Source: Lepidodermella squamata
Lineage: Eukaryota; Animalia; Gastrotricha
Length of the DNA: 64,000 nucleotides
Reading direction: 5' to 3'
NCBI GenBank assembly: GCA_047495785.1
Contig: JBLDXI010000042.1
Coordinates: 3,348,001 to 3,412,000, forward strand
Shown here in pieces: positions 1-36,978 of the stretch (its first letter is position 1; each line of letters opens with the position of its first letter). The notes beneath the pieces were generated by a model. That model was not told the DNA's origin and searched no databases. It worked only from the letters and a program-made list of their open reading frames with translations. The position numbers were made by a program, and so were the translations under genes.

Positions 1-75
1 CGAAACGCGGTCGAAGTTCAACGGATTAATTACCAGCTCTTGTACGCAGGCAACTATATGAGGATCTGGTGACAT
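1..75 (-). CDS. 5' start of a further MIF4G-family paralogue (G8), running off the window
   Basis: Minus frame from ATG at 75 reads MSPDPHIVACVQELVINPLNFDRVS, like the N-termini of the other paralogues (LLDNPDQLDLVA, LAEHPEEIDLVA). Acceptor-like ataatag near 98. Confidence 0.5.
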   Translation of the reverse strand, partial: MSPDPHIVACVQELVINPLNFDRVS

Positions 76-253
76 TTTATTCAATTTTATATATAACCTA
101 TTATCCAACAAAAGTTCCGTTTTAGAAATTTTCGAAAATATTTTTCTCATTTTGTAATGACGAAAAGCCCAAGAACAAATGTCCCCGGGCAAAATTTCAC
201 ATCGTGAGTTACGATATTTATATATACAAAACAAAATATTAATCAACACGGAA

Positions 254-3200
254 TCATTTGCTCGTCGTTGAAGTAGGACGACAAGATGCAGCAGGCTGGC
301 CGGGATTTGATCGCTTAGCACTTGAATCATTGTTAGGAATTGAGCTTGAATTAATTTCGCCAGGTCTTTTCACCCCTTTGTTCGATACGGGTCGGTTTGA
401 GCCATTATTAGCTGAGTTACTGGAAGAAATCGAAGCTGGCCTTGTTAGAGTAGAATTACTCAGCGATGAGCCGATTTTTCGCATGAAAACAGCACTAAAT
501 TGCTGACAATAATCGTCACTCGACTCTGATCGAACGAATTCGAGGATTCGATCGAATTCTTGCTGGTACAATGCCGAGTTTTTCGCGAGTTCGGGCGTCA
601 GTTTTGAGAGCATGCCTTCCAATTTACGACTAGCCTCCTTCGCTGGATCAACGTCAGGCCAGTGTTTTTTCAGGTTCAAAATATCTCGCAATATTAGTTT
701 TGATTTTTCAGATGACGAGCCTATTTTCGCCAAATCAGTGAAAAAGCCGGTCCACCACGATTCCAATTTTTGCGCACGAACCAGAGGTGGCAATAATTTT
801 CCGATTCCTGAAAATATCTCGAATAGCAGGGCTAAGGAATCCTCGTCACCGATGGACAATAAAGCGTCCATGAATGGCGTTAAAAACTTGAGATCAAGCT
901 TTTTGTTCAAAAATAAGCCATTTGTTATCCTGTTGACGGAAAAAAATTAAAGATCGCGAGCTACTTTTGAGGCATGGAACTCACTTTACACATCCTATTC
1001 GACGCTTTAAAAACAAATTTTCCAGTCGATGAATTTCCTCGACCTTGTCGGCAATTGTTCTTGTTTCACCGGGAAGATAGCACATGAGAGAATGCAACTG
1101 GTCACAAATAAATTATATCGACAAGATAGCAAAATAATTATTTATAATGTACCGTTTCAGCTTTTTTCGAACCCGTTTCTACGGCTGATTTGGCCAGCTC
1201 AAGGTCTGATTTAGCTTGCCCACTGACGTATTTCAAGCAGAACGCTTCGAAATCCGGCTGAAAATTGCGACTACGACCGAATTCAGTTTTTGCTAGATCA
1301 TTAATCGCTTTGACAGCCTCTTCAGTAGTCTGGTCGTTGATCAATTCAAAAACCTGTGATTAACAAATAAATTACGAAAAATTCTTAGAAAAATCTACAA
1401 AAATCCACCCTAATAGAAAATTGCGAAACTGCTTCATAGAAGGCAAGAGGAGTAGGAAGGGACTTGATATGAGCTTTGTAAGCTTTCAACCACGGCGGTT
1501 CTGAATTCGACGGGTTGTCCATAACAATCGATCGCAAAATCACGCGAAGAGCGTCATCTTTAGGTCCTTGTTCTTCCTGAGGCTGCGGGGCAATAACAGC
1601 CGCAACATGGTTGGGGAAGGTAGCAGATTGAACTTGAGCGATTTGACGTTGTAGCTCGTCAATCTTTTCTTGCATAGAGGCAAAATCGTTGACAGAAACA
1701 ATGGGAATAACAGCAGGGGGCAATGTCGGGTTGTTTTGAACCGCCGGCACCGCCACCCTTGCAGGAGGTTCGGGTGAGGCTGGCGATATATTACCGCCTA
1801 AACTTCGCCGGCTAACATCAGGCGCGCCACGACTCGGCAAGTTTTGTTGACCTGGCGAAATCGAAGATGAAATTTCTGACGGCCGAGTGGCCAAACTAGG
1901 TGCCGCCAGGGCCGGAAAGGAAGGGTAATTGGCCGCAGTTGACGTTATCGCGAGAATTTTCGGGGCAGAACCAGTAGAACTGGGCCGAGGAGCTGCCTCT
2001 AATCGGGCTAGTGGAATGGCAAGAGCAGGCGGCTCGATTAGAGGAGGAATACCCAGGTCGAACGCTTCCACTTTACAAGTACAAGCCGGATTACGTCTCA
2101 GACCTCCTTTCTAAAAACAAAATTTAAAAAATTTGTAAATAATGAATTTTATGAATTTTTTGTATATAACACATAATTAGGCTAAAAACTATTGCGCAAC
2201 ACGATAATTATGTTTTGCAACAGGCAAATTATGAACTTTTTTGAAACCCACCGTTTTCATGTCATCCAAAAACTCGGTCACATCGCCATTCAAGGCGCTA
2301 TTCGGTATTCGGTTCGAATGCAAGTTCTGCGATAAACGATCGATAACAACGTCCCAAAACGCAAATTCCTCATCGGTGAGCTGAGCGTTGTACTGGCTTA
2401 TCAACAATTCGATATTCGATATACATTCAAACATGATCCTCGATGAGTTTTCATCTTCATTAGTCGCTAACAATGCGACGTAACTTTGAAATATGTCTCG
2501 AGGAGCTAGGCCAAGTCGGTATAATTCCCTGGTCAATCTGAAATAAGAGAATATGAAGGCCGAAAGTTGAAATTAGAATTGACTTACTTGAAGCTTTTAA
2601 AGAAATTTTCGAGGTCTTGTTTGTTTTGATCATGCAGAACTTTCGTCACGGCATCGCGCAGCGTTATTAGATTGTTCGGGAATATTTTTATTTCGAACTA
2701 GTAATAACGAAAAATCGATAAAAATTTATAGTGGATTTTGAAAATTTACATCTTTCAGAGTTTCGAGGAGTTGAATACAGACTTCAAAACTGGCGCCTTC
2801 TACAGCTAAAATCTGGAAAAAAATAAAACATTTGCGAATTTTTTTTGACTTGACATATACTTACGCCATCCAAAAGATGTTGTGTGTTTAGCTGAAACAT
2901 CCCGGCCGTTCCTTCTTTCGATAAAAGCTGTTTCATATCATTGCTGATCGATTGGATCTGATCAGGATTCCGAGTCAAATTCGACAACAAACTTCTGACA
3001 GTCAGCGGAGTTTGAATAATCGTTTTCTGCAAATTAGGAGCTGGAAACGAGTTGCGCCCAGCGGATAATGGAATCCCGGCAGGTCGTACCGGTGGCGCTA
3101 TCTGGCCACTCGGAGCGAAAGCGCGGGGTGCGAAATTATTCACTGGCCTTGGCTCGAGTTGGACCAGTCGATCGCGGTGAAAACGGCCCGCATGTTGGGA

Positions 3201-4211
3201 AATATCAACAACTTGGGTTTGAGCGGGAGGTCTAATTGCAGCTGTAGTTGGAATTGTTGGCCGATTACCGCCTGCCGGCCTAGCCGGGTTTGATTGGGTT
3301 CGAGAAATCATCGACTGGTTATGATTTTGCGGTCGGCTATCGTTTGAATCGGTCAAATCGACCATCAAGCCTTCTAACCGCGGCATTTGCCACCGGTTTT
3401 GCTTTTGGAGATAGTCGAGGAAAATCGCGAGAGTTTTCGCGAAACTCCGATCTTGCAGCGAATTTAATGAATCGCGAAGTTTGATAATAGTATTTTCCCA
3501 ATGGAAATCTTCCATTTGTTTCGCGTTCCACGCAACAACTCGCTGGTCGACTAGTTCCGAAGCAACGCGAGCAACAACATATTGGAACTTGATCCCCAGC
3601 TCGAGGTTGAGTGAAAGACTGGCGGTGGTGAAAATTGTTTTGAAAACAGTCACCTGAAGAATTTTCTGCCGAATACAATCCGCCGCAAAACTATACAAAA
3701 AACCGGATTTCAGGGGAAAATGTTCGAAAAAACCGAAAACAAACGGAGCTCGCTGTTCGAAGTGATTGAAGCCCTCCTGGGTGATATCACAGGGTTTGAA
3801 AATCACATTCGCAAGTGAATCTTTCACTTGGATTATTCCTGTAGATTCGCTCGATAAGGTAACCTAAAATTAATATTGAACGTTAAAACAAATCAGGGAT
3901 ATCAAGCATACATTTTGAATCTCGTCCAGCAGTTTCAGGTAGAGTGGCCTGATGGTTTGATGCGCTTTGAAACACTGAAAAATACCATTTTCGAAATTAA
4001 CGTAAAATTGACAATATTAAAATTTTACATGGGCGAGAATAGTAGATATTGCATCTTCGAAACCACGCTGTGTGAAATACTGGTTAAGATGGCCTTCGAA
4101 TTCGTGCGCATAGTAGCCAATCTGTTCGGCGTCACCTCGAGCGGCAAATTTTTCCAGCAGCTGGCCGAGCTCGCGATCACGATTCACCGTATACCCGCCA
4201 CCTGGACGCAT
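254..4211 (-). CDS. Multi-exon divergent multi-MIF4G protein G7 with Pro/Arg-rich linkers
   Basis: ORFs 4017-4211, 2784-3827, 2189-2536, 1385-2071, 1138-1344 and 254-910 join through short GT-AG introns. The last module (FMDALLSIGDEDSLALLFEIFSGIGKLL..WWTGFFTDLAKIG..ILRDILNLKKHW) follows the eIF4G MIF4G pattern. The start codon is uncertain. Confidence 0.65.
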
Positions 4212-4262
4212 TTCGCACCGAATGGAATATACGCAATAATTTCATAAATTATACATCTAGCT

Positions 4263-5086
4263 TTAACATAAAATTTTAAAATTATTACCTAAGGTTTCCT
4301 CATACTGCCACATATTTTTCTATAGGCGAGAGTGATTAAACCAAAAATGGTATAATTTTTAAATGTACCTCTTCTAGCTCTTTGATAAACTGAGCTATTT
4401 CACCCCTATAATTAGGATTTTTTACCGCTTTCACGTATCCGGCTTTCAGGAGTGAAAGCGCATTTATTGCCTCTAGAACAGCGGGTCCAAGCGAAATTTT
4501 ACCATCCTCGATAACATTACTCAAGCAGCGTAAAATTTCGAAAAGTCGCAACATTTTCGACTGGACAACGCAATCCTTAAACGCAACTTTCAAGCGCGAA
4601 ATCAAGACATCAAGAGGCAGCAAATGTTGCTTGGTCAAATCGCCTAGAACCCTGCAAAAATAAAATGAAAAATCTTAACAAGGAAAAAAGGAGTATTACT
4701 CAAGCTCGGTTCGATAGACTTGTGATTGATTTATGAAACGTTTAGTCACTGCAACTCGCGAAATAGCATAGGCTATGGTCATATCAGGCGATTCCGGGAA
4801 GCTCACCGTCCACGGCAGGAGATATTTCAACATTTCGATGAAACAGGGGCAATTAGGTCTTCGTAGTATTGCGTTTATAGTCTGTGGTAAAACTATGGTA
4901 CACTTAATACATATAGAAGCCTAGAAATTATACCTGGCACCATACTTCGCTGACGATATCTAACAGCATCTTCTCAGTAAGGCTCTTCCTTCTTATATTC
5001 GCCATCAATTGCGTGCATAGAAACATTTTCTTCCGGCTAACAGGCAGAGAATTTACGAAATGCTTGATCCAACCAAAACGCGCCAT
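4263..5086 (-). CDS. Short single-module MIF4G-like paralogue G6
   Basis: ATG 5086 (MARFGWIKHF..), several small exons including ORF 4336-4638, and the family's phase-0 intron before a K-x-x-W motif (EE|KNMW). Stop at 4263. Confidence 0.45.
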
Positions 5087-5186
5087 TATTAAAATCAATT
5101 TACGATGTCTAAAATTGAGGATAAAGACGTGTCAAGTTTGCTCGATATTTATTATAAATAAACAAATTTTGTAAATGTAAATTTGA

Positions 5187-7905
5187 TCAATACGTTCCGG
5201 GGGCAGAGGAAGAAATGTGCGTTACTGACTGATCGATTTTTTGCAGCAAAATTTCAAACATTTGCTGGCAGTGATTGTCCTTGTAACTCGCTAAAATAGC
5301 CGGATCTTTAGCCAGTAACTCCCTGGCACTTCGCAGCGATGCGTAATAAGTATCAGGGTCATTTACACGAGTTTCGGCAGAAATCGCAGTCATTATAGCC
5401 GAGAGAGCCTCGCGAGTCACGCGTTTGCTATCAATAGGTGGCCACTGAGATTTTTCGACCAGAATCGATGATGCAAGTAATCCGATTTCGGGCGAATTCG
5501 CCTGAGCGGCTAGTTCTTCGAAAAACGAATCCCACCAGCTTTCCAACCCGTTTTCTGACACATTCAGGGCTAACAAACGGCCGCAGTCGACCAAAACTTG
5601 CCACAAATTTTCGTAGACAGCTTTCGATGGGGAGATAATCAAAGCATCGCACAGTTCAGTTATGAACTTGATACCCAGCCGCTTTTTCTGATATAAATGA
5701 GCAGCCAATTTCGCGCAACCGATACGACGTTTCTTACTCAATTCCTCTGAAATCTGGGGGAAAAGATATAACAATATTAATGGGCTATTTTAGACAAATT
5801 ACCTGAGAATCTGGTGCTTTATCACAACCTCCAGCTAGATACATCACACAAAAAGCTTCGAAATCAATTTGAAAGACCTTCCCGCGACCGAACACGGTTT
5901 GCTGAAAATGCGAAATAGCTTTACCAGCTTCACTCAAGCTCTCGTCATTTTCAATAAGCTCGAAAATTCGCAATAAGCTAGTTTCAAGAGATCGAGTGAA
6001 TTCGTAGGGCGACGGAACTGTTTGGAGATGAGCGACTAGAGCCCAAAGCCACGATTTTGAGATATCGGTTAGAGAAATCGAGTTGAGCAATAGGTCGAAC
6101 TGATTCAATTCTTCAATATTGCCAGTGCACTCAACTGATTTTTGAGCTTCACCCCAGACAGGGTTCTGAAAAGTTAATAATTAAATGGGTTGAGGGTTGA
6201 GCGAACTTCATTTTCGTACCATGTCGTAAAATTTCAGAAATTCTTGAGCTTCAGCATGCGTTTCCGGGTCGCTGTACTGAGATCGCAACCGATCCAACTG
6301 CTGAGACCAAAACGCGACTTGTTCCGGTCGTAAGGCAGGCCAAGATCCAGATAACACGTTTTTGTGAACATTTTCGACGAGGCGAAACAGCAAGTAGAGG
6401 GACAAATTATCGTCACCTAATGCCAATTCCAAGGCATATTGTTCGAAAAGCTTGTCTGGCACCAATTGAACCCGCACCAACTCGTTAGAGAGGCTGGAAA
6501 ATTTGGAAAAATGATCTAGTTTAATGAAATTGAACTTTTCTACCGAAAGCTGGCGCAAAACTGGTCAATCTCATCACGGCTATTGAATTTGTTAGGGACA
6601 GTCGTACAACGAGCGACAGCTAGAAGAAACGTGACATCGGAAGATTTCCACACCACCTTAAAATATATGCTAGAATTCCATTTTTTTTTTTAAAGATAAA
6701 CCTATCTTACATGCTTCAGTGAGGCAAGCAGGGCGACAAAAGTCGGAAAATGAGGGGCTGAATGGGAAGCAAAAGTCTGAATCGAGAGAAATATAACACA
6801 TATTCGGTAAATTTATGCTGAATTTTTACCGCGTTCAAAAGCTCAAATACTCGGTCGTCGAATGCCACAGCAGTTGGCTGAGAAGTCAACAGACTCTCAA
6901 GATACACCGACGCTTTCGGTAGGAAACTGGGAGACTCAGCTAGTTGGGACATGATTGACAGAGCCGCGGACTTTTCCGTAGCAATAGGCTTCGCTTTCGG
7001 CGGAGATCGTGAGTTCTCGGCTGAAACAGCGCCCTCGGAGCTCTTTCTTTTCCGGCTACTGCTATACCACCTTCCTTTCTACACAACATTGAGACCATTA
7101 AGGAGGAATTAAAGAGGGGCAATTCGACCTAACCCGTTTCAAATCTTTGAAGAAGTTTAAGATGTCGCTCTCGTATCTCTTATCGGCGATAAGACCTCGA
7201 TCGTAGTCTTTCTTAAGGCGGTCGACACATTCCGTCCACTCCTTGTTGTTCGAAGGATCAGATGGGCTTATTTTGCTATCATATAGCAAATCAGCAAGGC
7301 GCAAAATCTCGTAAACGAAGTAGGTGCCGTATTCTGATGAATCTTTGTTAATCGTGGAAGCTAAATTCTTCAGATAGCCGAACGGGCTCAAATGACTGAG
7401 CAGGTATATCTCTTTAAGGAGGCTAAAATTATCTTGCAAATGATTGAAAAATCGAAATTTCACGGTATACTTACGACATTTGCAGTCGGAATCGCTCGAG
7501 ACCCTTTCGATTTACCTCAGGAAGGGGCGCAAAATAACTCTGAAGAGCAAATTTCACACTTGTCAATTCGTTCGCAAAATAGAATTTTTTCTGTATTTAA
7601 AAAAAATTGAAAAAAAATTAAATTTCATCGCCGGAAATACCTCAAATAAGGCATCAATGAGCTTGGCGTAGTAAGGTCGAGCGGAGGAGGAAGCATCGAA
7701 ACCCTGAAATAAAATTTGAACTTGAAATAGAAATATCTTGCAAAATCCTAAATAATGCCTTTTCCAAGATGTCCGCGACCAGGTCGAAAAACTTCTTTTT
7801 GTCCGAGCAACGCTCGAGCGTCTGTGCCACTTCCGAGACCAAATTTTTCCATTGATCGGGATGCTTTTCTAAGACATCGAGCAGAAGACTCAACTCTCGA
7901 GACAT
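5187..7905 (-). CDS. Multi-exon multi-MIF4G protein G5
   Basis: ORFs 7654-7905, 7098-7463, 6716-6952, 6208-6558, 5785-6108 and 5187-5774. KRRIGCAKLAAHLYQKKRLGIKFITELCDALI..YENLWQVLVDCGRLL parallels eIF4G RRSLGNIKFIGELFK..LECLCRLLTTIGKDL. Confidence 0.7.
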
Positions 7906-8011
7906 TTACAAAACCTATTCCATCATTAGTTTTAGCAAATATTGGCAACATTCCAAGCATTAACAATTGAGTTTTGAGCATAAAATGCGAATCACCCGAA
8001 AGAAAAATGAG

Positions 8012-10540
8012 TTAGTTATTTGCAGGGGCAGGCATTTCAACGCCAACGGACTCGAGTTTCTTCAACAAAATTTGAAAAATTTGAAAAATATGAGGGTCAT
8101 ATGAAAATTGTTGTTCGATTAATTGTTTGATGCGAGCTATCCAGTCGTCATTGTTTTGATTGCGTTCGATAGTCAGTTCGGAGGCAAATATCTCTAATAG
8201 CTTGGCAGCTTGAGATCGAGCATTCTCCAGAGATTCCGTGCAAATGATCAGTACAGAGCGAATCAGTGTCTTGACTGAATGAGAGGACGCTTCGTTTCTT
8301 TCAGAGTCTTTCATTTCTTCGATGAAATTTTCCAGCCATAGGATGAAATCATGATCGACTAGCGAAAAATCGACCAGTTCCAAAATTCCTCGCAAGCAAG
8401 TAATCGATTCGACAGAGTTTGAAGCGAGTAAACGATTACAAATCGCCATTATGCATTCATCATCGACCAATCCATCTTTGAAGAGGACAGCAAGGAATCT
8501 TAATTATAATAATCAATTCAAAATAAAGGTTCAATTTACAACTCAACAAACCTGACAAGGTTCAGTTTTAGATTCTCAAAGCCAGGTTTTTCAAGGAAAT
8601 TAAGAATAGCATGCTGGAGAGATTGCTTAAATTTCTTGCCGCGACCGAATTCCGTATCATTGAGTTTTGAAATTGCGGCGCGAGCGCTTTCAAGACTTGC
8701 TTCATCGGTAATTTTATCCAATATCTTTTGAAAATTTATAATTTTTACTCATTAACTAAAAACAGGCTGCAAGTACAACCTCCGATAGAATCTGGTCTAC
8801 CAGACCAGCGAATGCAAAGTTGCTAGCCGCGGCTTTCAACGCATCGATCAAAGGTGAGACCCAATCGTGCGAGCTATCCGATAAATCAATATTTCGTACA
8901 ATTTCGTCCCGACGAGGTTCCAAGTAAATGAAAGCTTGCCATCCGCCATTCTAAAAAATGCAAATTCATAATAACTATATCCCGCTGAAAAATTGTCAGT
9001 TTACGCTGTCAAGGCTTTCAATAAAATCCGATGCTTCATTTTTAGAAAATGCCTTGAAATCGTGATTTTCGCAGGCCAATGAAAGGCGATTGGTCTGAGA
9101 CTGCCAGAAGACGATATCATCCAGTGATAACTTCGCTTTGGTACTTTTGAAAGCATCGTAGACACTCGAAAGAATGCAGTGAAGTAATATCAGACCGATT
9201 TCTGAATATTCACGCGAAAATTTTTCAACAAATTTCGTGAAAATTTCAGCATTGATCACACCATATTGAAACAGCTCAACGGCAAATCTGATCAAAATAG
9301 CCGTTAAGAAACATAAATTATATGAAAAATGTTGCAATACCGTAAGCTGTGTTTGAACTTTCCGACATCTGCAAGACTGAGGACATGCTCGGTGGCTTGG
9401 AAGCACAACTCAGAGACCTCTTCCTTGAACGTACAGTTGCCGTGAGGCATCGAGATTCCAATATCACTCAAGCTGGCTAACAATTTGAAACCAACAGACT
9501 GCTCTCTCCGAGCCAAATAAACAGGATTCAGTACTTCGAAAACGGCATCTTTGAATTTTCCAATATCCGAGCTTTCGTTCAGCATTTGGCGAATATTTGC
9601 CGTAGAACGGTTCAGTAAGGCCGGGTTCATCAGCAGAACCTCCATCGTTCGAGAGATGACCGAAGGGGGATCGATATCAAAGAAAACACCCGAATCTTGC
9701 TCTTTGGGTGGGCTAGCAATGTATGGATTTTTGACTGGGGGCTCAAATTCACATGGAAAATGGTCAGCGGCCCTTTTCTTTGCTTGGAAATGAAAGTTAG
9801 CAAGATCGCCCGAAATCCATCTTTTCTTCTGAAAAAAGCCGGATGTAAAAAAAGATCCGAAGTAACAGATCCAAAATTAGATTACCTCTTTGAGATTATC
9901 GAAAAATTCTTCTATCCTCTCTAAAGCTCGAGGGTCGTTGATCACACCGTTATTGCAACCGTTCAGCAATTTTTGGAGGCAGCCGGTTATGAAGGCATTC
10001 TTTCCCCCACTTGCAACTTCATAGTTTCCGTCGATCAAATGACTAAACGCAGCCAACACGTCAAAGGTCATTAGCAAGTTGGTTTCAGACACGTCTTTGG
10101 GAAGATTTACAGCAGCTGATTTCATAGTACCAGTCCTGATAGCGCCAACTTTGTACAGCTCAATAAGCAATGGTAGTTTCTTGCGGAGCTCCTTCAAACT
10201 GGACATCGGTTGCAAAAAATAGCTATGAACCGCGTCAGTCATCTTCACGCCTTTTCCGTCTTTAGGGGTAATTTCAATCTGTTGAGAGAAAAAGGTTTTA
10301 CGCTATTTTACTACTTGCCAAGCTGAAAAATCATACATGAATTAACTCCTTGATCAGGGCGGCAAAACGGGGTAGAAGAGGTAGGCTAAATCCTGTAATT
10401 TTGTCCAGCAACAGAGTAGTTTTCATCTTCAAATCTGCTTTGGTTGGGCATGCAACAAATTTCCTCAAATACGCCTTAGTAACCATTTCCAGGTTATACG
10501 TGTCGTCAACCAACCATCCGAGTTCCAACAAAAAATCCAT
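8012..10540 (-). CDS. Multi-exon multi-MIF4G protein G4 (three modules)
   Basis: ORFs 10331-10540, 9877-10248, 9304-9645, 8996-9406, 8536-8721 and 8012-8470. Exon-by-exon paralogous to G3. Contains CIMAICNRLLASNSVESITCLRGILELV. Confidence 0.7.
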
Positions 10541-10644
10541 TTTTCTATAAAAAATGTAGAATTAATCAATTTTTAATAATTTTTTAATATAGATTCCGTT
10601 AGCTATCCAAACATAAAATTTTAAAAATTAACAAAAAAGAAGCA

Positions 10645-13170
10645 CTATTCAAGTTTTTTCAGAAAAATATCAAAAAGACTAAGAACATGATCATCACCGC
10701 TAAATTCACGAGTTATCAATGTTCTCATGTAGTTGACGATTAGAGAATACTCTTGCGGAGATGAGTGCCGTAGATTCTGAGTTAGACTTGCAGCTAAATT
10801 CGTTAAAAGATCCCGAGCTTGAGACTTGGTACTCGGCCATAGATTTTTCATGTCGAGTATTGCGAAGACCGTCGCTCGAGTCGACGATGTGAGTTGGGGT
10901 TTTGTAGCGAAATTCTGTAGCTCATTGAAAAAGTTGTCGAGCCACGTCAAATTTTCACGGTCTTGCATTTTCGGACCCAAATGGCTCTCGACATCTCTCA
11001 ACAGCTCGAGGAGGTGGGTCAGCGATTCAGACGATTTTGAAACGAGCAGTGCATCGCATACTCGCTTCAAATAATCCACATCTACGAGATCATTTTTGAA
11101 CAAATGGCCAATGAACCTTTTGGTTAGAAATTTCGAATGCAATCAAATTCAGAAAATCCAACTCAACTAACCTTATGCAGGCCACTTTGTCAGAGAGACC
11201 GAAATCGCCGGATTTTGTGAGGTATTTTAGAATAAATCGCTCGAATGCTTGCTTAAAATCCCTGCCACGGCCGAAAGATGAGGTCAAAAGAATTGACATA
11301 GCCTTACTTGCGTTTTCAAGGCTTGTCGAGTCACGAGTCTGAGACAGAAACTAGCGAAAAATTGTTTATCATACCTTAAGCCTCCAATTTATAAAATATA
11401 CCTTCAATATTAATTGCTCGATGAGATTTGTAAAATGGGCATGCGATTCGGACTTTCTGAGTCGATTAACAAGAGCCGATGTCCAAACTTCGGCTTCATA
11501 TGAAAGATTAATATCTCTGACAAAAGGATCGAATTCAAGACCCTGAGGTAGAAATGCTTGCCAACCGCCGGCCTAATAAATACGATATATTGACAAAATT
11601 AAATCTGAATTAATGCCTTACATTATCCAGATCGAGCAGAAAATTTATCACAACACTTTTGGGTATTAATTCGAATTTATTTTCGTAGCAGGCTATCGAG
11701 AGTCGATTAGACTGCATTTTCCAGAATGCGGCTTCGTCAAAGGTTAGCTTTTGAGATCCTTCCTTCATCAGAGCGAAATAATTCGAACAAATCGTAAGTA
11801 GGACAATGAGGCTCATTTCGGAATCGTCGGTTGTGAATTTACGGACATATTCCTGGAACAACTCACTTCCGATTACTCGATATCGGAATAACTCATTCGT
11901 CAATCTGAACACAAATTACAAAAATGGGAAATATTTTAGAATAAAAATTATACCTGAAACTAGATTTGAAGCTATTGACATGGTCCATGGTGGTAAAAGG
12001 TTCGGTAACTCGACAACAAAGGGCTGAGATCTCCTTCCTAACCGAACTATCACAATCCGTGAACATCACTTCAACATCGCTCAAACTTTGCAGAAGTTTT
12101 AAGCCGGTTTCCAACGGACGACCTTCTCTCGCAAGATAAACCACGTTCAAAATGTCGAAAACACCCGCCTTGAAACATTCAAGATCCGAACATTCAGACA
12201 ACATTTGGCGAATATTATTCGATGTTTGATGGAGCAAATCGGGATTCAAAAGTAAAATCTCCATGGATTTTTTAATTAGGGAAGTAGGAGTAGAAATGTT
12301 GCAAGCTGAGCTGCATGGCCTTGAATTTCGGGACTCAGTTCGCGATGACTTGGAAGGCGAAATTTCTTGACGATCGATTTGAGCCCGCTTTCGAGACTTC
12401 AAATTCGAAGTCGACACTTCAACCCATCTATTTTTCTAAAATATATTATTATGGTATCAGGAATTATGAGAATTGTTCCGAAAATCACCTCTTTCAATTG
12501 GTCGAGAAATGCCATGATTTTTGCGAGATCTTGAGGGTCTTTAATTTTACCGTTGTCACAGCCTGCTTGTAATTTCTGAACGCAGTGGGTCATGAAAGCA
12601 TTTCTTTCCGGGTTCATAATTTCGAAATTCCCATCGACCAAATGACTGTACGCCGCAGTTATTTCGAAGAGCATTAACAGATAAGTCGAGGGTAACAATT
12701 TAGGCAGTGACGTCGCAATGATGCTTTTAAATGAGCCAGGCCTGATCGCCTGAATTTTTATCAACTCGACCATGAGAGGCAATTTTTGACGAAGATCAGT
12801 CATTCCAGTGTACGCTTGCATAAAATAGCTGTGACTAGAGTCGATAAAAGCGCAAATCTTTTTCGTGGTTTGGCACATAATTTTAACCTGAAAAAACTGT
12901 TAATTAAGCAAATTCAGAAACGTGTAAAATACCAACCTTGTCAATCTTTTTCACGAGCTTAGCGAATATTGGAATCCGAGACGAGTCGAAGCCCGCCATT
13001 TTTCTCAGCAAGGCAGATGTTTTATCGAAAAATTCAGTTTTCGTTGAACATGATTGAAATTTAGTCCGGTAATCCGCGGCTACTAAATCAATCTCTTCTG
13101 GGTGTTCTGCTAGCCGATCGAGCCCGTTAAAAAATACGGGGTCAATATTTGAAAAATTATTGTCAGTCAT
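10645..13170 (-). CDS. Multi-exon multi-MIF4G protein G3 (three modules)
   Basis: ATG 13170 (MTDNNFSNID..); ORFs 12904-13239, 12399-12878, 11893-12417, 11610-11912, 11090-11299 and 10645-11142. Contains FIGHLFKNDLVDVDYLKRVCDALLVSKSSESLTHLLELL. Confidence 0.7.
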
Positions 13171-13253
13171 AAATCTTAAAAATTCTAAATTTAAGACACA
13201 AACTAGTAAAAAAGTTTTATTCAAACAACTAAATCTCAAAAAAAATCGAGTAC

Positions 13254-16200
13254 TTATTGATAGCCACTGAAAGGTAACGGAGTGGCAGGTACACCGGATG
13301 AGTAACTATCAGACAAGACCAAATCCAATTTTTTCAATAATACTTCAAAAATTTGTTGCGTATGATTGTCTTCAAATTCACCGAAAATCAACGAACGAGC
13401 GTATTGAAACATCAACTGGTAATCATTATAATTAGTAAAACGCATATTCGCATCGAGTTCGCCAATCATTTTAGCCAGTAAATCGCACGCATTGCTCTGC
13501 GGCCACTTTCGCTTTTCGGCCAAAATTTCATTTATCGATGATTTGATCGCGTCCGAGGTGGATTCGTGTTTTAATACGGCCGTCAGTTCGTCGAAGAAAG
13601 CGTTGAACCAAATTAAAAGGCCGTTTTCTTCTATCACAGATGAAATTTGCTCGCCGAATTCGGTTAGAATCACAGACAAACATTCAAAAGATTCGTTAGA
13701 TCTGGTAGCTAGGAAATAGTCGATCACAGAAACAACAAATTTGACATCGATATGGCCCAATAAAAACAGCTTTCCAATCAATCTGCGAAAAATATATTAT
13801 TTTAGAAAGGAAATTGAATTTTCTGACAATTCAAAGCTGAAAACACGAATTCAAGTTAAAAAACGTCATGTCGTATATGATATTATTGCACTAGCAATGA
13901 TAATAGAACCACACGTTCAAGAAGAAGACAGAAGACCATATACCATTTAACTGAGAAAAAAATACCTCGTAAAATTTAACCGCTGGATTGAGCTGGATTC
14001 TTCCGCGTTATTTGTAAGAAATTTCAAACAAAAGCGATCGAACAATTTCCGGAGATTTTTCCCTCTCCCATAGTCATTTGCGAAAAGAATAGCTGTAGCT
14101 TTCGCTGCTTCCAACAAATCAGCATCATGCGATGCCTGATCGATCATCTGAATAAAATGAATATATTTCAATTTTTTTATCGGATTATTGAACCTCACCT
14201 TTTTAATCACGATTTGCAGAAAAGTAGAGAATTCGATAGGCGATTTAATTGTCATCATTTTAATTATCAAAGGCCTTAGCCAAATGCTGGCCTCAGTTCT
14301 CAAACAAATCCCTTCCAGAGGGTCCATAATTTCTTCTTCCACGTAAGGCTTAGCAATCCACGCTCCATTCTGCGAATATTATCAGTTACGGGAAAATTAT
14401 TGGTAAGTTAACTACCTTCAGAAAATCTTGAAGAAACTGTTCAACTTCGGCTTGAGAAATGTCGCTGAAAATCTTTTTACGGGCTGCTTGAGCTAACCGC
14501 TCGGTTTTTTCTTCCCAGAATCGAATTTTATCAGCTGCCAACTTTGAGCGATCGAGGACTGAGTAAAAAGTTTGAACAACACGAAACAACGCAATATGTC
14601 CGATCTCTGACTCGTCTTGGCTGAAGAAAGCCGCATGGCTCTCGAAGGCTTCGTTGTCTACAAAACCAGAGGAATACAGCTCGCCAATGACCCTATAAAT
14701 TACAAATTTATAACAAACTAATACGGATAAATTGCTCACTTGAGTCTTGACTGATATTTTACAACGTCTGCGATAGCTTTCAACGATTTTGGCTTTCCGC
14801 AAGTCAGATTAATTTGACTCAGGCACGTAACAGTTTGCCCTTGGGACGTTTTGATTTCAATCTGAATAGAATGAAATGAATTTTGAATTACAATCAGAGC
14901 AATTTCACAAACCGCTCGCAACGCATGAAGAAAAGTTAGGCAGGTTGCTTTACACGCAGGACTTGAAGATACAAGAATCTAAATTGGTCGCTTTTCAACA
15001 CATTTTAGCGCAAAAATTAGTCGAAGCACTTACCGAGTTGAGAACTTCGACAATGCACTTCATGAATTCGACCTGAGTATTACATTTAGTGACAGCTGCT
15101 ACAATTTCATTGGTCGATGGAGATAAATCTATAAATTGTAGCTTCTTAGGGTCTTTGAGTATATCCTGCAATATTCTCTTCACGGCATCAGACGGCTGCT
15201 CTTTAATATCATCATCCGAATCGTCCAAAACAATCGGTTTTTCTGAGGTCCCTGCTTTATCGAGATTCAACACTGGCGCCTTTACAGGGACTACGGCAGG
15301 TGGAATCGCTGTTGGAGCTGTTATATCCCAACGAGATTGGCGCTTCGGCGATATTTGCTTGGGCTGATCAAGACTGGACATTGGTCTCTTGACCGGTTCC
15401 TGTTTAGCTATCGGTTGATTTATTTGCTTCTGCTGGTCAAGACTGGACATTGGTCTCTTGACCGGCTCCTGATTAGCAACCGGTTGAATCAAGGGTTCAA
15501 TTTTCTTCACTATCCATGGCGATTTCTAAATTACGAAAAACGATAGAATGTCGCGGTACCAATCGACTATAATTACCGATATGAATTCTTGCAATCGACC
15601 AAAGGTAATAGGATCTCTTATTTTAGCGATACCCACACTTTTAAGCCTCTGTACGCAATTAATCATATATATTCTCATTTTCGGACTCTCCGTGATGAAA
15701 TTGCCTGCCAGCAAAGAGTAATAACTTTCAGCCAACTCTAGGAGGTTACCTAAACCGACATTGTCATCGGTTTTAGCGTTACTTTCAGTAATGCTCCTGA
15801 AAAGGTTGATTTCGATGATTTTCCGCTTCATCAATTCGTTGAATATAGGCATTCTTTTTCGCAGCTTATCCGGCGTCACTTTCTTCATGAAAAAACTGGC
15901 GAATGCGTTGACGAGGGTCAGCGGAAATTTACTATCAGTACACGAAACAGCTATCTGAAATGAAACGGTATTTTGACTGAGAATTAAATCAAGCACTTAT
16001 TATATACCCTTTCGAAGCGTTGCAAAAGCGAAGCAAATAGCGGGGCACACTCAGGTCCGGCATCGGCGGACTAAACGATGGAAATAATTCGATAAAGTCT
16101 GAGTTGGAAAGCAGGAAAATTTCATACATAGTCAACAATAACACCAACGTTAGCAAAAAAGCTCTTCTTCGTCTTGCAGTTAACAAGCACTGGGTGAATA

Positions 16201-16262
16201 GCGCTAGCAACCAGGTCAAGCTGATCTGGATTATCAAGCAGTTTTTTCAACAAAATAATCAT
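13254..16262 (-). CDS. Multi-exon multi-MIF4G protein G2 with internal 23-aa repeat, ULM-like and SIM-like motifs
   Basis: ATG 16262 (MIILLKKLLDNPDQLDLVA); ORFs 15526-15996, 14995-15510, 14386-14802, 13947-14342 and 13254-13781. Contains IGKLFLLGHIDVKFVVSVIDYFLATRSNESFECLSVILTEFGEQI. Confidence 0.7.
15353..15489. repeat. In-frame 69-nt tandem duplication inside G2
   Basis: Two copies encoding QEPVKRPMSSLDQ(Q/P)KQI, period 69 nt. Confidence 0.9.
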
Positions 16263-16426
16263 TTCAGCCTATATCATCGAGATAGAAAGCAAGCAAAATT
16301 TAAACAAAAGATCACTTTATTTTTCATAAGTAAAAAGACTTTTATTCGCTATACTTTACATCTACCACCAACAACAAAATATTGAGCACATATAGCTAAA
16401 TTTGAGCAAGTAAAATTGCAGAATGT

Positions 16427-19400
16427 TCAAGTCGTTTGGTTATACGGAACACTAGTCAGCGATATCACTCGAGCCGCCGAAGAGGTAGCCGGGCTTGACG
16501 GAATTTCATTCGTACCAGGCACAACCGGCTGCGATTTAACAATTGGAGCACTTTCAACCGTATTTTGAATTATATTAGCACCAGTATTGTTGTAAACAGG
16601 TAAGGTAGGCCAGGTGTATTGCTGATACGGAATCATCAACGAAATTTGTTGAACCTGATTTTGGGAAGTTGCCAAGTCGGAGAGACAGTTTTGGAATTCT
16701 GAAAGCATTATGTCCATCAGAGAGCACCCGAATTCAGCTGGGCAGTCTTTGTAAAAATTTCGAATTCGATTTAGCACAGCGTCGTATTTTGTCTGTTGTT
16801 TGAGCAAGGCAGGTGTTAATTCTAGCATCATTAATCTCAAACGTTTCGCAGCCATCTCTTCGTCGCTCAAAACAGGCCATGAGTTCTGCAAAAAAAATCC
16901 ACAAAATTCTCAACTCTGTTAAAATTAAGGGTAATAATTTACCGATTTCAGCTGTAAAATTTCCGAAACAACAATTCGCATTTTGATTGATGAATAAGAA
17001 TTCTGCCCAATTTGAGTCAAGTCGTTGAAGAAGTTGGTCCACCACATATCCATGCAATTAGCCCGAACTTCGGCCTCAAACTGCCGACCTGCGATAACGA
17101 GAATTTCCAGTAAGACTTCCACCATTTCATCGGAAATAACGCGGCCCAATAGCGAGCCAGTGAATGATAAGAACCAATTGAATGGCATCAGTTTTTCGCA
17201 AAATAACCGGGCGATTAATCTCGCTGCGCCTAAATATTTTCGTCGCACCGATGAATCCACCGTTTCGAATTTATCCTTCAAAATCATTTGCTCATTTGGC
17301 TGTAAAAAACGAGAGTCAACACAAGAAATTCAAGCAATGAGACCATTACCGAGCTACTAGAATCAATCTCAGCGAGAAGCTTATGCAGAGTCTCTTCGTT
17401 TTCACTTCGGCTTTCGTGGCTAAATAATTTTTCATAGGCCTCCCGTAAAGACACCATAAAGCCTTTACCGCCCTCATTTTTCAACGAATCAAGCTCTGTT
17501 ACAAGTTTTAGAGCAGCTTCGAGCGAAGAATTGTTGTCGATGTTGACGAAAAGACGGTTAATTATTGCCTCGGCAGCTTCGGTAAACAAGCATGGTGTTC
17601 CGAGTGATAATAAAGTCGACTTGAGAACTTTCACCGTAGTCATAATTCCGTCACTTTTCAGGAAATTCGTCTCCAAATAATCACAAAAATTTGCGTGGCT
17701 AATAGGAGCAACTTGTTCTTCCTCATGATTCTCGCTAATTTTTGCTTTTTTGGCTTTCGATTTATTGCCTTTCCGAAACCAGCCTCCTTTCTGAATCGAA
17801 TCGATAAATATTGCGTTCAAATTTTCGCGGATAAATCAGACAAACCTTCTCAACATCTTCTAAGAATGAAGAGATTTCATCAACACGATCATGGCCAATC
17901 AAATGTTTCGAGCATGATTTTGCGAGATTTTTCGTGGCTTTAGCCCAGAAATCACGTTCTTCATCCTCATATTTCCAAGATTTGTTATCAATCAACCAAT
18001 CGACCACGCGCAAGATTTCGTAAATAAACAGCGCTTTGGCGATTTTATCAGATTGTTCGGCATCAATAGCGCGGACGAAAATCTTGAAAACACTCTTCTC
18101 CAATAAATCGAGCCGATACAGCTCCTTGGCAACGGTCAGGAAGGGACAAAATTTGGCCAAATGCTTCAGTTTCGTGAATTTTTTGTAATTCAGCACGTAG
18201 TTCGTAAAAGCTTTGCAAAGAGAGTAACTCTTTCCCTTCTTTCCTGTAACAATCGAGACTGAACGGAGGCTATCTAACAACTGAATGTAGACAGGGAAAG
18301 CCTCCGATGAAGCGCTAGAAACCTAAAAATGCGGTAATAATAAGTTTCGGTAATAAAATACATTCCATGGTCTACTATAAACATACCACTGCCCAAATGG
18401 CAGCCGCAGCCTCACAGAGGCCGTCCTTTGTAGTAATAGAACGCAATACATTTTCCATTTCATTAGCTAACGAAGGCCAATTTTCGGGAATCGTTACGAC
18501 CGATTGAAGAATTTCGTTTATTTTCTGGGTGAAGTCTTCAGTTACAACATCAGATTTCTTCGCGTTTTCAGTCGGCTCATCAGTGTGATCTGACGTGGAT
18601 CCAATAAAAGGCTTTTCTTCGAAGCCTTCGTCCACCGCGTCAGAGGTAGCTTTTTGAGCCATTTCTGCTGCAACAACGATGACAGAATCATCATCGTCAC
18701 TTTCATCCACTTTATTATCATGAGTATTGACGTTGTTAGCAGTTTCTTGGAAAACAGTCTAAACCGATGCTAAATTAATTCCATGAGATCGTAAACTTTA
18801 TGAAACTTACATGCTTATTTTTTTCGGTACTTCTGATGATATAGCGAGCAATACTAGCTCGATGCCAGCCTCCTTTCTGTTTTAGTAAACAAATTCGTGA
18901 AAACAGGTAGGAGTTTCGTAACAACGAATCTTACAAGAGGAATAGCAGCTAAGAACGCTGAAATTTCTTGCGCTTTTTTGACATCTTTAATCGTATTTGT
19001 TTGACAAGCCATGGCCAAGGTACAGCAGCAATCTTCATAGAAAGCCGCCTCAACTTCCTTGTACTTCCAAAAATTGCCATCAGCCAATTTATCGACATTC
19101 GCCATGATTTCATATAGGGCCAGCATAGAAACCTCGTCTTCTTTACATGCAAGGTCTGCAGCCAGGTATTTGAATATGCCATGCAGAATCATCTTCTGCA
19201 GGTATAATGCGTTGATTAAAGGTAACGCTTCGCGAAATTTAGAAACATCGCCGAGTTTTGTAAACTTTTTAAAGTGCATCACCCAAGATGATACAACAGT
19301 GGTCACCCTGTTAGGGCTACCTCGATTTCCATTTCCCTTGTAAATATTCTGCAAAGCTTGGAGCAGTTGAATAAATGAAGACAGCTGAGATGTTCCGCAT

Positions 19401-20512
19401 TGAATGGCGAAAATTAAGATCGCATATATTGTGTCCCGAAATTTGCCGTCAGAGCATTTCCGCAAGGAATTTTCGATTTCACGAGCGCTAGATTCAATAT
19501 CTTGAGCAGTGCCACTCCATTTTGACACAAGTCGGCGAATAAATCCAATGCAAGAACGAATGGAAGGCGACAAATCTGAGTCATTAACAACTTGCAATTG
19601 CACGGGTTTTTCAGTTGTAACAGGACGGTTATCAACAGGCTTGGGCTTCGAAGAGATTATTTTCCTGTTCCAGCCACCTTTCTAAAATTGCTCGAAAGTT
19701 TGAATAATATTCTGCAACTTTTCTAATGCATTACCGTTTTCACAGAATTAAGAAACTCGGAGATCTCTTGGCTCGTAGTGCCCTCTGTGAAGCAAGTTTT
19801 TCCATTAGTAACTCTACCGCAGCAATCGGCCCATACTCTATCTTCGTTTGGACTCAAGAAGTATAAGCCGTCATCAATTAACCTGTCAACGATCTTCAGA
19901 ATTTCGAACAAGCAAAGCAAAGCGGTATTTGGCAGTTTTCCACGATGTCTGTTGAAGTTTTGAGCAAAAAATAGGAACGGTTTTCGCTGTAATAACTTTG
20001 CACGCTCCAGATCCTCCAAAAACGGCAAGGCACTAAGAAACTCATCCAAAGGAACTTTGTCCATAGTAGGCATAATTAGACACATTTTAGATACTAGTTG
20101 ATTAACAAATAGGTTTGAACCCGAATTCGTCACTATCTTCATCTGATCAAGTGAAAGAAAGCGTAAATCATTCATAAATTTGTTGATGAAACAATAGCAA
20201 ATAAGCTTACCAAGGCTATTTCTTTTAGGAAAGAAGCGATCGTCTGTTGTTTACTGCGATTTGCGGTATATGCCTAACCATATACGATAAAATATCGTAA
20301 CTATGTCATGGCCCATTCAATTTTACCTGGGTGAGGATGACCTCAATCGCCTGGATGAATTTACCCTCATCAGATGTAAGCGCCTCCATGAACAGCCTGG
20401 CCTGACGAAAAATATCACTTTTGTAGCACGTCATTTGGTCAGCCAGTTGGGCGATAGATCGTGGATCATCATTGCCGAGCGAATGACTTCGCTTGCGTTG
20501 ATTTGCTGCCAT
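16427..20512 (-). CDS. Multi-exon multi-MIF4G protein G1 (about four modules), first gene of the left array
   Basis: ORFs 20306-20512, 19723-20175, 18854-19603, 18375-18710, 17762-18280, 17284-17820, 16925-17287 and 16427-16891. Three internal modules each end with an intron then KGGW. The last module is RRKYLGAARLIARLFCEKLM..VEVLLEILVIAGRQFE..IKMRIVVSEILQLK. Confidence 0.72.
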
Positions 20513-31466: not shown

Positions 31467-32588
31467 CTTGTTTTAAATTATTGAACGCCAATATGAATAA
31501 TTCCTTTCCATTTTATCTCAAAATGTGAATGTACGTTGCTTCATTTGTATGTGATACATTCTACAATCTACATTGTTGCTGTCAATGAAAGATCTAATAA
31601 AAAAACTTATTTTGGCGATTTATTTTTTGAAAATTTTGAGTGAATTGTTGCTCAAGTTTCGACTGCTAACATACAGTGAACTCTCTCCGTGTTACCTCTT
31701 TTATCCACTATAACGATTTCCCTCTTATAGTGATAGCTGAGGGAATAAAATGAAGAAAGTGGGCAATTATGAATTTTCGTAATAATTTACAGTATTTGCT
31801 GTAACCGTTCACTTGGTTTTATCGGCATCAGCTGGCTTTATGGCGAAATCACTCGCTTTAGTTTCCTCCTGGTATCAGAGGCCGAAGGCTGGGGTGTCTC
31901 AAACTTTGGCTCGTCTTCTTCACCAGCCTGAGAAATAACAATTTCCTAGCATTTTATCATTTTTGGGACGCTAATGCAAAGAGTCAGGCGATCAACAGGT
32001 GGTGTGGTATACGCAAACCTTATCAAAGTACGCCTCAAAGTAAGCGATAGCTGTGCGGCAGAAGATAATTAATAATTACAATAAACTAATTGACAACCGA
32101 AAAGTGCAAGCGTATTGGAGCTTTTTGCATTATATGTTGAACATTGAAAACATTTTTTTCCCATACCAAGATATTGTTTTTGTTATAGATCTTACTCTCC
32201 TTTGCTGTATGATTATAAATATTTTCTACGTGGAAATAGCTGTTTCAGCTATCGAACGCTTTAAAATGCTCAACTTTCAGCTCTTATTATTAGTTAATGT
32301 CGTTCGCGACGCGCCAAAATAACCACTTTGATGACTCATTCGATCGTACTTTGACGAGCCGAACGTAAATAAGGAGTACGTTCGGCTTATTTGGGCACTG
32401 ATCGTAATATGAATTTGCGTTCAAGGGTCGAACGAACATTCCATAAACAAGCTATAAATAGTAAAGTGGCCTTCAGCGCGTCGCTAACGATGTTTACCTC
32501 TTGTGATACTTATTATTTTAGGAGAGATGTGCCACGTTTTTCAGGGCCCAAGAATTTACAGCTGAGTACTCGTGAAAATAATTTTACC

Positions 32589-36943: not shown

Positions 36944-36978
<35 letters not shown>

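What the first reader, a model, noticed from the sequence alone, without database searches (positions are those of the whole stretch)
1..20512. Large tandem expansion of rapidly diverging multi-MIF4G proteins (candidate undescribed RNA-regulatory system)
Seen: at least 8 co-oriented genes here, plus 3 at 58-64 kb, built from 1-4 helical modules. The most C-terminal module aligns by eye with the eIF4G MIF4G domain (GKxF..RRxLG..FIGxLF..ESLxCL..W..FF..IL.LK.xW) and is followed by a shared family-specific helical tail (L..LT..L..Y..R..F.ILLKKL). Paralogues are very divergent in protein sequence yet the frames appear intact. Known: animals normally have few MIF4G proteins (eIF4G, DAP5, CBP80, UPF2, CWC22, NOM1, CTIF, SLIP1, PAIP1, CNOT1), mostly low-copy scaffolds that bind DEAD-box helicases or RNA. 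None of these orthologues is recognisable here. Inference: a lineage-specific, fast-evolving family of helicase/RNA adaptors or decoys, with the evolutionary pattern of germline, genome-defence or antiviral genes.
Basis: partly seen in the sequence, partly recalled or inferred. Interest (0 to 1): 0.9.

Follow-up and report, generated by a model that had tools for sequence, protein, structure and literature searches.

The report
Tandem poly-MIF4G gene family
A compact invertebrate genome carries a row of intact genes, two of them shown to be spliced into RNA, whose proteins are two to four copies of the MIF4G helical domain of translation factor eIF4G plus a private tail; the family is real and known only from this lineage, and its function is untested.

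Summary
The core observation holds. Window 1-20.6 kb has six complete minus-strand genes, not 8 or more, plus the first exon of a seventh. Three more lie at 58-64 kb. Gaps between genes are 63-164 nt.

Each protein has 1-3 internal modules, then a C-terminal module and a ~65-aa tail: 25 modules in all.
- A profile of the C-terminal modules hits human eIF4GII/eIF4G1 MIF4G at E 3e-14. Its model matches eIF4G HEAT1 (Z 16.7).
- An internal module folds as ten helices (pLDDT 94). Its 12 best structural matches are all MIF4G domains.

Genes D and E are spliced in cDNA. Against a ~3% diverged genome they show 20 synonymous and 12 non-synonymous changes (pN/pS about 0.17).

Family members elsewhere come only from metagenome contigs of one relative, also in tandem. 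Two orthologue pairs show the duplications predate that split. Springtail multi-MIF4G proteins group with canonical eIF4G, so they arose independently.

The proteins are eIF4G-derived and lineage-restricted. No arms-race, germline or defence signal was found. Helicase binding is untested. I found no paper on such a family.

The scan already found this array on adjacent DNA (s1-422658, about two dozen genes).

The parts
1..75 (-). First exon (ATG at 75) of a further family gene that continues beyond the left edge of the window
   Evidence: The ORF segment 369..1 ends with MSPDPHIVAC.... Earlier notes s1-391799 and s1-398183 place more genes to the left.
254..5086 (-). Gene A. Four modules: internal at 4339-4674, ~3300-3863 and 2192-2572; C-terminal MIF4G at 662-1359; tail at 464-661; then a Ser/Pro-rich end and the stop at 254-256
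   Evidence: HMM hits, ORF segments, ATG and gap.
5187..7905 (-). Gene B. Three modules: internal at 7101-7511 and 6211-6564; C-terminal at 5226-6180, including the tail at 5226-5444
8012..10540 (-). Gene C. Three modules: internal at 9880-10302 and 8999-9409; C-terminal at 8042-8748, including the tail at 8042-8230
   Evidence: Position-wise sister of gene D in the tree.
10645..13170 (-). Gene D. Three modules: internal at 12402-12899 and 11613-11915; C-terminal at 10648-11350, including the tail at 10648-10839. The intron 11351-11401 is shown by cDNA. A donor at 11169 joined to ...IGHLF is shown by a loose end
13254..16262 (-). Gene E. Three modules: internal at 15529-15996 and 14416-14808; C-terminal at 13257-14369, including the tail at 13317-13505. 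cDNA-proven introns: 16071-16127, 14979-15033, 14862-14912, 14370-14415, 14148-14198 and 13783-13965
   Evidence: Spliced contigs of run X1 with GT..AG ends on the minus strand.
16427..20512 (-). Gene F. Four modules: internal at 19726-20250, 18932-19582 (a single exon, the one modelled) and 17765-18322; C-terminal at 16943-17835; tail exon at 16676-16885
   Evidence: Weak Pfam MIF4G hit on 16925-17287. Orthologue P0009 in the relative.
58010..60486 (-). Gene G. Two modules: internal at 59756-60486; C-terminal split between 58975-59712 and 58013-58561, with the tail at 58157-58354. The start codon is uncertain
60640..62765 (-). Gene H. Two modules: internal at 62000-62536; C-terminal plus tail in one exon at 60775-61548 (the one modelled), with its first helix at 61586-61684
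62829..64000 (-). Gene I, cut by the window end. C-terminal module at 63365-63673; tail exon at 63111-63320
   Evidence: Orthologue P0012 in the relative. The array continues to the right (s1-422658).

Best explanation
SHOWN. This is a tandem array of intact protein-coding genes; the two genes checked (D and E) are spliced into RNA and under purifying selection.
- Each protein is 2-4 MIF4G domains (the five-HEAT-repeat middle domain of eIF4G) joined by charged or Ser/Pro-rich linkers. It ends in a family-specific helical tail of about 65 aa.
- There is no eIF4E/PABP-binding N-terminus, and no MA3 or W2 domain.

INFERRED HISTORY.
- An eIF4G-type MIF4G unit was duplicated inside a gene. The internal modules form one clade.
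- Two intron positions are seen in more than one module by cDNA (just before 'IGxLF' and just before the inter-module 'GGW'); elsewhere they are inferred from sequence only.
- Whole multi-module genes were then duplicated in tandem. The modules of C, D and E group by position.
- At least part of this happened before the split from a related species, which also has tandem copies.

INFERRED MECHANISM (from the known biology of MIF4G domains, not tested). In eIF4G, DAP5, PAIP1, CWC22, CNOT1 and UPF2, MIF4G domains dock DEAD-box ATPases or other RNP partners. By analogy these proteins would be multivalent, catalytically inert adaptors. Each MIF4G would hold one partner, such as an eIF4A-like helicase or RNA. 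The tail, and in five genes a SIM-like acidic-hydrophobic linker motif, would add family-specific contacts. The paralogues would differ in partner or client specificity.
For: MIF4G identity:
- The C-terminal profile hits eIF4GII/eIF4G1 at E 2.7e-14 and 7.4e-14.
- The AF2 model of H 60775-61548 has pLDDT 87.6. Its best match is eIF4G HEAT1 8huj_B: Z 16.7, rmsd 3.2 over 181 residues, 3 Z units above the next match. It is also the Foldseek top hit.
- The internal module F 18932-19582 has pLDDT 94.3 and ten helices. Its 12 best matches in an exhaustive search are all MIF4G domains: DAP5 Z 13.1, yeast eIF4G 12.7, human eIF4G 12.4, UPF2, CWC22, PAIP1.
- The internal profile aligns to the C-terminal profile in the same register (hhalign E 5e-5).

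Functional genes:
- Spliced cDNA contigs with GT..AG introns cover genes D and E, and a SMART cDNA adaptor is present.
- Differences from run X2 are 20 synonymous and 12 non-synonymous, over 992 S and 3589 N sites.

History: tree clades, tandem copies in loci L001-L004 of the relative, and intergenic gaps of 63-164 nt.
Against: - No binding partner, RNA target, tissue or localisation was tested. The adaptor mechanism rests on analogy only.
- Conservation of the eIF4A-contact residues could not be assessed. The papers read name no residue list for the eIF4A sites.
- Internal modules match eIF4G only weakly by sequence (E 0.07). They may have lost ancestral partners.
- Helical-repeat Z-scores around 13 can occur by common architecture (note). 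Here, though, the whole top of the list is MIF4G.
- Only genes D and E have RNA evidence. Full-length spliced models were not assembled.
Confidence: 0.6

Rival explanations
1. Decoys or competitive inhibitors. The MIF4G-only proteins would sequester eIF4A, or another eIF4G partner, away from eIF4F and damp translation of particular mRNAs or under particular conditions.
For: The C-terminal module is closest to the eIF4A-binding HEAT1 of eIF4G. The proteins show no MA3 or W2 domain in the exons scanned, and the first module starts within about 45-80 aa of the ATG, leaving no room for an eIF4E/PABP-binding region. They could therefore bind without assembling a full initiation complex.
Against: Nothing distinguishes a decoy from an adaptor with the data in hand. 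Several MIF4G domains per chain suit scaffolding better than simple titration. Nine or more diverged paralogues kept under purifying selection argue for distinct specificities.
Confidence: 0.15
2. A fast-evolving genome-defence, antiviral or germline-conflict family. Copies would diversify under positive selection to track changing targets.
For: The family is a large tandem array with very low paralogue identity (13-30%). Orthologues diverge faster than MTO1 (40-48% against 69%). The distribution is lineage-restricted.
Against: pN/pS is about 0.17 in genes D and E. Orthologue pairs are retained across species, and module clades group by position, so the duplicates are old and stable rather than turning over. 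No expression or target data exist.
Confidence: 0.1
3. MIF4G folds reused as general protein-protein scaffolds unrelated to helicases or RNA. For example, nuclear or SUMO-linked assemblies, or structural components of a lineage-specific cell type.
For: SIM-like motifs (a hydrophobic run next to an acidic or Ser cluster) lie in the linker before the last module in genes E, F, G, H and I. Basic NLS-like patches follow the inter-module Trp. HEAT repeats are versatile (PMC9177959). Internal modules have drifted far from eIF4G.
Against: The C-terminal module keeps strong eIF4G-type sequence similarity. Every characterised MIF4G protein acts in RNA metabolism (established knowledge). The short motifs can arise by chance.
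Confidence: 0.12
4. A decaying array of pseudogenes, or a gene-prediction artefact.
For: Single exons fail Pfam thresholds. No protein of this genome is in the public protein collections searched. RNA evidence covers only two genes.
Against: All 25 modules lie in open frames with full-length profile coverage. Splicing is correct. Synonymous changes are in excess. The AF2 models are high-confidence.
Confidence: 0.03

Closest known systems
eIF4G middle domain (MIF4G / HEAT1; PDB 1hu3, 8huj, 2vso)
   Same: The fold is the same ten-helix HEAT domain. The C-terminal module shares its motifs in register (GK.F, RR..G..FIG.LF, ES.E.L, the terminal LK..W). It is the best sequence match (E 3e-14) and the best structural match (Z 16.7).
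   Different: There is no eIF4E/PABP-binding N-terminus and no MA3 or W2 domain. The domain is repeated 2-4 times per protein. A private 65-aa tail follows it. There are about ten genes in this window rather than one to three per genome.
UPF2 (three tandem MIF4G domains) and CBP80
   Same: Several MIF4G domains lie in one polypeptide. UPF2 MIF4G-2 and MIF4G-3 are among the structural matches (Z 10.8-11.6).
   Different: There is no sequence-level match to UPF2 or CBP80. The modules here derive from an eIF4G-type unit by recent internal duplication. The genes are multi-copy.
Orchesella dallaii (springtail) 'MIF4G domain-containing proteins' CAL8148144/47/49, and Planococcus citri LOC135847373
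   Same: These are uncharacterised proteins with 3-4 eIF4G-type MIF4G copies. The three springtail genes lie on one contig.
   Different: Their copies group with canonical eIF4G, not with this family. They keep the canonical 'AENAWKP ... ILNKLTP' lead-in and lack the tail and the WW..FF signature. This is an independent, parallel expansion.
MIF4G-only adaptors: DAP5 N-terminal domain, PAIP1 middle domain, SLIP1/MIF4GD, CTIF
   Same: These are proteins in which a MIF4G domain acts as a docking platform without the rest of eIF4G. DAP5 and PAIP1 are top structural matches for the internal module (Z 13.1 and 11.0).
   Different: They are single-copy genes with a single domain. No orthology was seen: the DAP5 sequence hit is only E 0.008.

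Membership tests
MIF4G domain superfamily (Pfam PF02854 / eIF4G HEAT1 fold) | Five HEAT repeats (ten antiparallel helices) forming a right-handed solenoid | tested here: met
   The internal-module model has 10 helices and pLDDT 94.3. Its top 12 exhaustive structural matches are all MIF4G. The C-terminal module scores Z 16.7 against eIF4G HEAT1.
MIF4G domain superfamily (Pfam PF02854 / eIF4G HEAT1 fold) | Significant sequence-profile similarity to known MIF4G domains | tested here: met
   C-terminal modules: E 2.7e-14 to 1hu3. Internal modules only: E 0.07 to eIF4G, but hhalign to the C-terminal profile gives E 5e-5 in register.
MIF4G domain superfamily (Pfam PF02854 / eIF4G HEAT1 fold) | Single sequence passes Pfam's gathering threshold (30.8 bits) | tested here: not met
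   The best exon scores 21.1 bits, E 2.9e-4. The others give no hit. Exons were scanned separately, and this lowers the scores.
MIF4G domain superfamily (Pfam PF02854 / eIF4G HEAT1 fold) | Docks a DEAD-box ATPase or other RNP partner | not testable with these tools
   No co-folding or binding assay was available. The papers read list no contact residues for the eIF4A sites.
Canonical eIF4G / DAP5 orthologues | MIF4G followed by MA3 (and W2) domains. eIF4G also has an N-terminal eIF4E-binding region | tested here: not met
   No MA3 or W2 hit in any exon scanned. ORFs stop about 65-140 aa after the last MIF4G. The first module starts within about 45-80 aa of the ATG.
Canonical eIF4G / DAP5 orthologues | Groups inside the eIF4G clade in a tree | tested here: not met
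   The C-terminal modules form their own starred clade (99/98), sister to canonical eIF4G. The internal modules form a separate clade (100/95).
UPF2 | Three MIF4G domains with UPF2-specific sequence, plus a UPF1-binding C-terminus | tested here: not met
   There are no UPF2 sequence hits in the PDB profile searches. The similarity is structural fold only.

The most novel reading that the evidence does not exclude
The two dozen poly-MIF4G proteins form a lineage-specific RNA-regulatory layer. Each paralogue would be a multivalent platform that recruits several DEAD-box helicases to a distinct class of mRNAs. Candidate classes are trans-spliced or operon-derived messages, or germline RNP granules. 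The inter-module 'GGW' tryptophan would act like the conserved Trp that anchors eIF4A upstream of eIF4G HEAT1 (Site 3; PMC9177959).
Probability: 0.15. Interest if true: 0.85.

Novelty: new variant of a known kind. Interest (0 to 1): 0.6.

Why it matters
MIF4G proteins are normally few, single-copy hubs of translation, splicing, mRNA decay and export. This animal lineage has taken the eIF4G middle domain, multiplied it within proteins, and then multiplied the genes: about ten in this window and about two dozen in the array according to a neighbouring report. Where tested, selection constrains the copies.

That would be a natural experiment in how a helicase-docking domain diversifies. It also gives a set of ready-made variants for asking what determines partner choice in MIF4G domains. 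If the copies serve particular mRNA classes in an organism with spliced-leader trans-splicing and operons, they would point to a new layer of post-transcriptional control. If they turn out to be generic scaffolds, the finding is a well-documented lineage-specific expansion of ordinary interest.

Tried and rejected
- Pfam on 20 single exons gave one sub-threshold MIF4G hit. Single-sequence methods are too weak here; family profiles were needed.
- The search for homologous proteins with the relative's full-length P0008 found only itself. The word index cannot reach such diverged kin.
- I tested whether the tail is a truncated start of a further MIF4G ('L..LTP' resembles 'ILNKLTPE'). hhalign of the tail against whole modules gave probability 0.3%. 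The tail profile found nothing credible in the PDB. No tail hit appeared among the 157 proteins retrieved. The idea is rejected, and the tail stays family-specific.
- Organism identity was not resolved. MTO1 is 55-57% identical to orthologues from many bilaterian groups (amphioxus, molluscs, insects, nemerteans, annelids, vertebrates), and 69% identical only to a metagenome protein. A chaetognath genome paper mentions no MIF4G or eIF4G. The source remains an unidentified bilaterian.
- Three full-text searches for an expanded or poly-MIF4G family found only UPF2 and CNOT1 structural papers.
- Mapping of eIF4A-contact residues was not possible. The papers read give IRES-contact residues and describe three eIF4A sites, but no residue list for those sites.
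- Rfam and tRNA scans of the window found nothing.
- The family profiles found no module in 21-58 kb on either strand.
- The relative's MTO1 locus L005 has no family module nearby. Linkage of MTO1 to the array is not conserved within the 19.6 kb seen.
Full report
WHAT IS THERE

The window is animal DNA with introns of about 50 nt and GT..AG ends. Ordinary metazoan genes lie in its middle: a forkhead factor, an MTO1 gene, a PPCDC-type flavoprotein and a SOCS-box ORF.

On the minus strand, stop-to-stop translation of 1-20.6 kb and 58-64 kb shows two kinds of recurring helical module.
- A C-terminal module followed by a conserved tail and a stop codon. It occurs nine times, with ends near 257, 5190, 8015, 10648, 13257, 16430, 58013, 60643 and 62832.
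- An internal module, which occurs sixteen times.

Profiles built from these modules find nothing else in the window on either strand. The next ATG lies 63-164 nt downstream of each stop.

This gives six complete genes in the finding's interval:
- A 254-5086
- B 5187-7905
- C 8012-10540
- D 10645-13170
- E 13254-16262
- F 16427-20512

The first exon of a seventh gene has its ATG at 75. Genes G and H, and the truncated gene I, lie at 58-64 kb. Module counts are 4, 3, 3, 3, 3, 4, 2, 2 and at least 1.

ARE THE MODULES MIF4G?

Single exons fail Pfam; the best scores 21.1 bits against a cut-off of 30.8.

A profile of the C-terminal modules hits the MIF4G domains of human eIF4GII (1hu3, E 2.7e-14) and eIF4G1 (8huj, E 7.4e-14). 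Yeast eIF4G (E 4e-5) and DAP5 (E 0.008) follow.

An AlphaFold2 model of the single-exon C-terminal module of gene H (60775-61548) has pLDDT 87.6. In an exhaustive structural search its best match is eIF4G HEAT1 in the eIF4G-eIF4A-IRES complex. That match scores Z 16.7, with rmsd 3.2 A over 181 residues and 19% identity, three Z units above the next. The same chain is the Foldseek top hit. The match stops at model residue 191. The tail (192-258) is helical but matches nothing.

The internal modules are further removed. By sequence their top PDB hits are again eIF4G1 and eIF4GII, but only at E 0.07. hhalign to the C-terminal profile gives E 5e-5 in the same register.

The model of the single-exon internal module of gene F (18932-19582) is decisive. 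It has pLDDT 94.3 and ten helices. The twelve best of 48,161 chains are all MIF4G domains:
- DAP5, Z 13.1
- yeast eIF4G, Z 12.7
- human eIF4G, Z 12.4
- UPF2 MIF4G-2 and MIF4G-3
- CWC22
- PAIP1
- mimivirus vIF4G

After every internal module comes a (K/N)GGW-type motif. This corresponds to the 'LR..NW' that ends canonical MIF4G domains. In gene E, cDNA splices '...DFLK' directly to 'NGAW...'.

ARE THE GENES ALIVE?

One run (X1) holds spliced contigs over genes D and E. It carries a SMART cDNA adaptor as a loose end. The contigs remove seven introns with GT..AG ends on the minus strand: 11351-11401, 13783-13965, 14148-14198, 14370-14415, 14862-14912, 14979-15033 and 16071-16127.

Loose ends show three further junctions, at 15526, 14739 and 11169. 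Coverage is present in all 30 bins and dips at the D/E boundary. These joints link the modules of gene E into one mRNA.

A second run (X2) is a genome about 3% diverged. Of its 40 listed differences, 32 fall in confident coding intervals: 20 synonymous and 12 non-synonymous. With 992 synonymous and 3589 non-synonymous sites, pN/pS is about 0.17. Only 40 of 141 differences were listed, so the ratio is meaningful but the absolute rates are not.

The read-laying tool could be called only once, so the other seven genes have no RNA evidence. Their frames are open across all modules.

WHERE ELSE DOES THE FAMILY OCCUR?

An exhaustive profile search of 1.84 billion representative proteins gave 899 hits at E 1e-3 or better, and none at 1e-30 or better. 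The proteins of this genome are therefore not in the collection.

The top hits are canonical eIF4G-type domains. They include uncharacterised multi-MIF4G proteins of the springtail Orchesella dallaii (three genes on one contig) and of the mealybug Planococcus citri.

True family members have the WW..FF signature, the internal modules and the GGW junctions. They are only P0008, P0009, P0010, P0012 and P0039, which come from metagenome assemblies where their source was looked up.
- Their contigs carry two or three family genes in tandem, and the tail as well.
- The same samples hold the closest MTO1, at 69% identity. These contigs are therefore probably one related organism.
- Against it the family is 40-48% identical in the best-conserved part and 27-30% in the internal modules. 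That is faster than MTO1 but not extreme.

HISTORY

A maximum-likelihood tree of 38 module segments gave the following.
- The internal modules form one clade (100/95).
- The family's C-terminal modules form another (99/98), sister to canonical eIF4G.
- The springtail copies group with canonical eIF4G, so their expansion is independent.
- Modules of C, D and E group by position (m1 with m1, m2 with m2, C-terminal with C-terminal). Whole three-module genes were therefore duplicated.
- F pairs with P0009 and I pairs with P0012, both starred. Those duplications predate the species split.

The low paralogue identity is therefore largely due to age.

MECHANISM

What is shown is anatomy, splicing of genes D and E, constraint and ancestry. 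The function is inferred from what MIF4G domains do elsewhere, which is to dock DEAD-box ATPases or RNP partners. I commit to multivalent, catalytically inert RNP/helicase adaptors as the most likely role.

Rivals are decoys of eIF4A, a conflict-driven family, and helicase-independent scaffolds. The SIM-like linker motifs in E, F, G, H and I, and the basic patches after the GGW, fit the last of these. I could not test conservation of the eIF4A-contact residues.

NOVELTY

I found no paper on such a family.

The scan had already noted this array on adjacent DNA. A follow-up (s1-422658) described about two dozen eIF4G-derived poly-MIF4G genes, with one shown to be spliced. My results agree and add:
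- the structural proof for the internal modules
- the pN/pS estimate
- the orthologue pairs
- the independence of the springtail proteins

It is a new variant of a known kind of protein, not a new kind of system.

LIMITS

The organism remains unidentified.

Noticed in passing
window 18707, 15234, 62987, 61804, 59625 (minus strand): SIM-like motifs (a run of V/I/L next to an acidic or Ser cluster, e.g. DESDDDDSVIVV, IVLDDSDDD, LIVISDDDEE) lie in the linker before the last module of genes F, E, I, H and G. None was found in A-D with the same pattern.
   Followed up: partly
window 19681, 18876, 17790, 15525, 14369, 12435, 11572, 9828, 8950, 7078, 3401, 62020: Every internal module is followed by a (K/N)GGW-type tryptophan, often with a basic patch. 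An intron lies just before it: shown by cDNA at 14370-14415 and by a loose end at 15526, and inferred from sequence elsewhere. It matches the 'LR..NW' end of canonical MIF4G. It could also play the part of the Trp that anchors eIF4A upstream of eIF4G HEAT1.
   Followed up: partly
window 11169/~11110, 13783-13965, 14739/~14700: A second recurring intron position lies just before the 'IGxLF' helix in three different modules. It is shown by cDNA joints or loose ends. This is consistent with module duplication at the DNA level.
   Followed up: partly
L001-L004 (metagenome contigs of a relative): The relative's family genes have far fewer introns. For example, 813 aa with three modules lie in one open frame. 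Each frame then breaks just after the MIF4G end (...K+K/EV...), where window genes F and I also have an intron before the tail exon.
   Followed up: no
window 45088-47121 (-): An intronless 677-aa MTO1 (GidA-family) gene. It is 55-57% identical to orthologues from many bilaterian groups alike (amphioxus, molluscs, insects, nemerteans, annelids, vertebrates). This suggests an isolated bilaterian lineage.
   Followed up: partly
window 36760-38219 (-): A forkhead-domain gene (Pfam E 6e-30) with a long poly-Q run and Ala/Asn-rich low-complexity regions.
   Followed up: no
window 54145-55350 (-): A 401-aa ORF in an AT-rich stretch (GC 0.36) that looks like the C-terminal part of a non-LTR retrotransposon ORF. 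It has no Pfam hit.
   Followed up: no
window 32391-33737 (+) and 30351-31247 (+): A 448-aa single-exon ORF ending in a SOCS box (E 5e-5), and a coiled-coil ORF with a sperm-tail NYD-SP28 C-terminal motif (E 4e-6).
   Followed up: no
window 16230: A cDNA contig of run X1 ends inside the first exon of gene E and continues into the SMART oligonucleotide sequence. The true 5' end, and any spliced leader, of gene E was therefore not seen.
   Followed up: no
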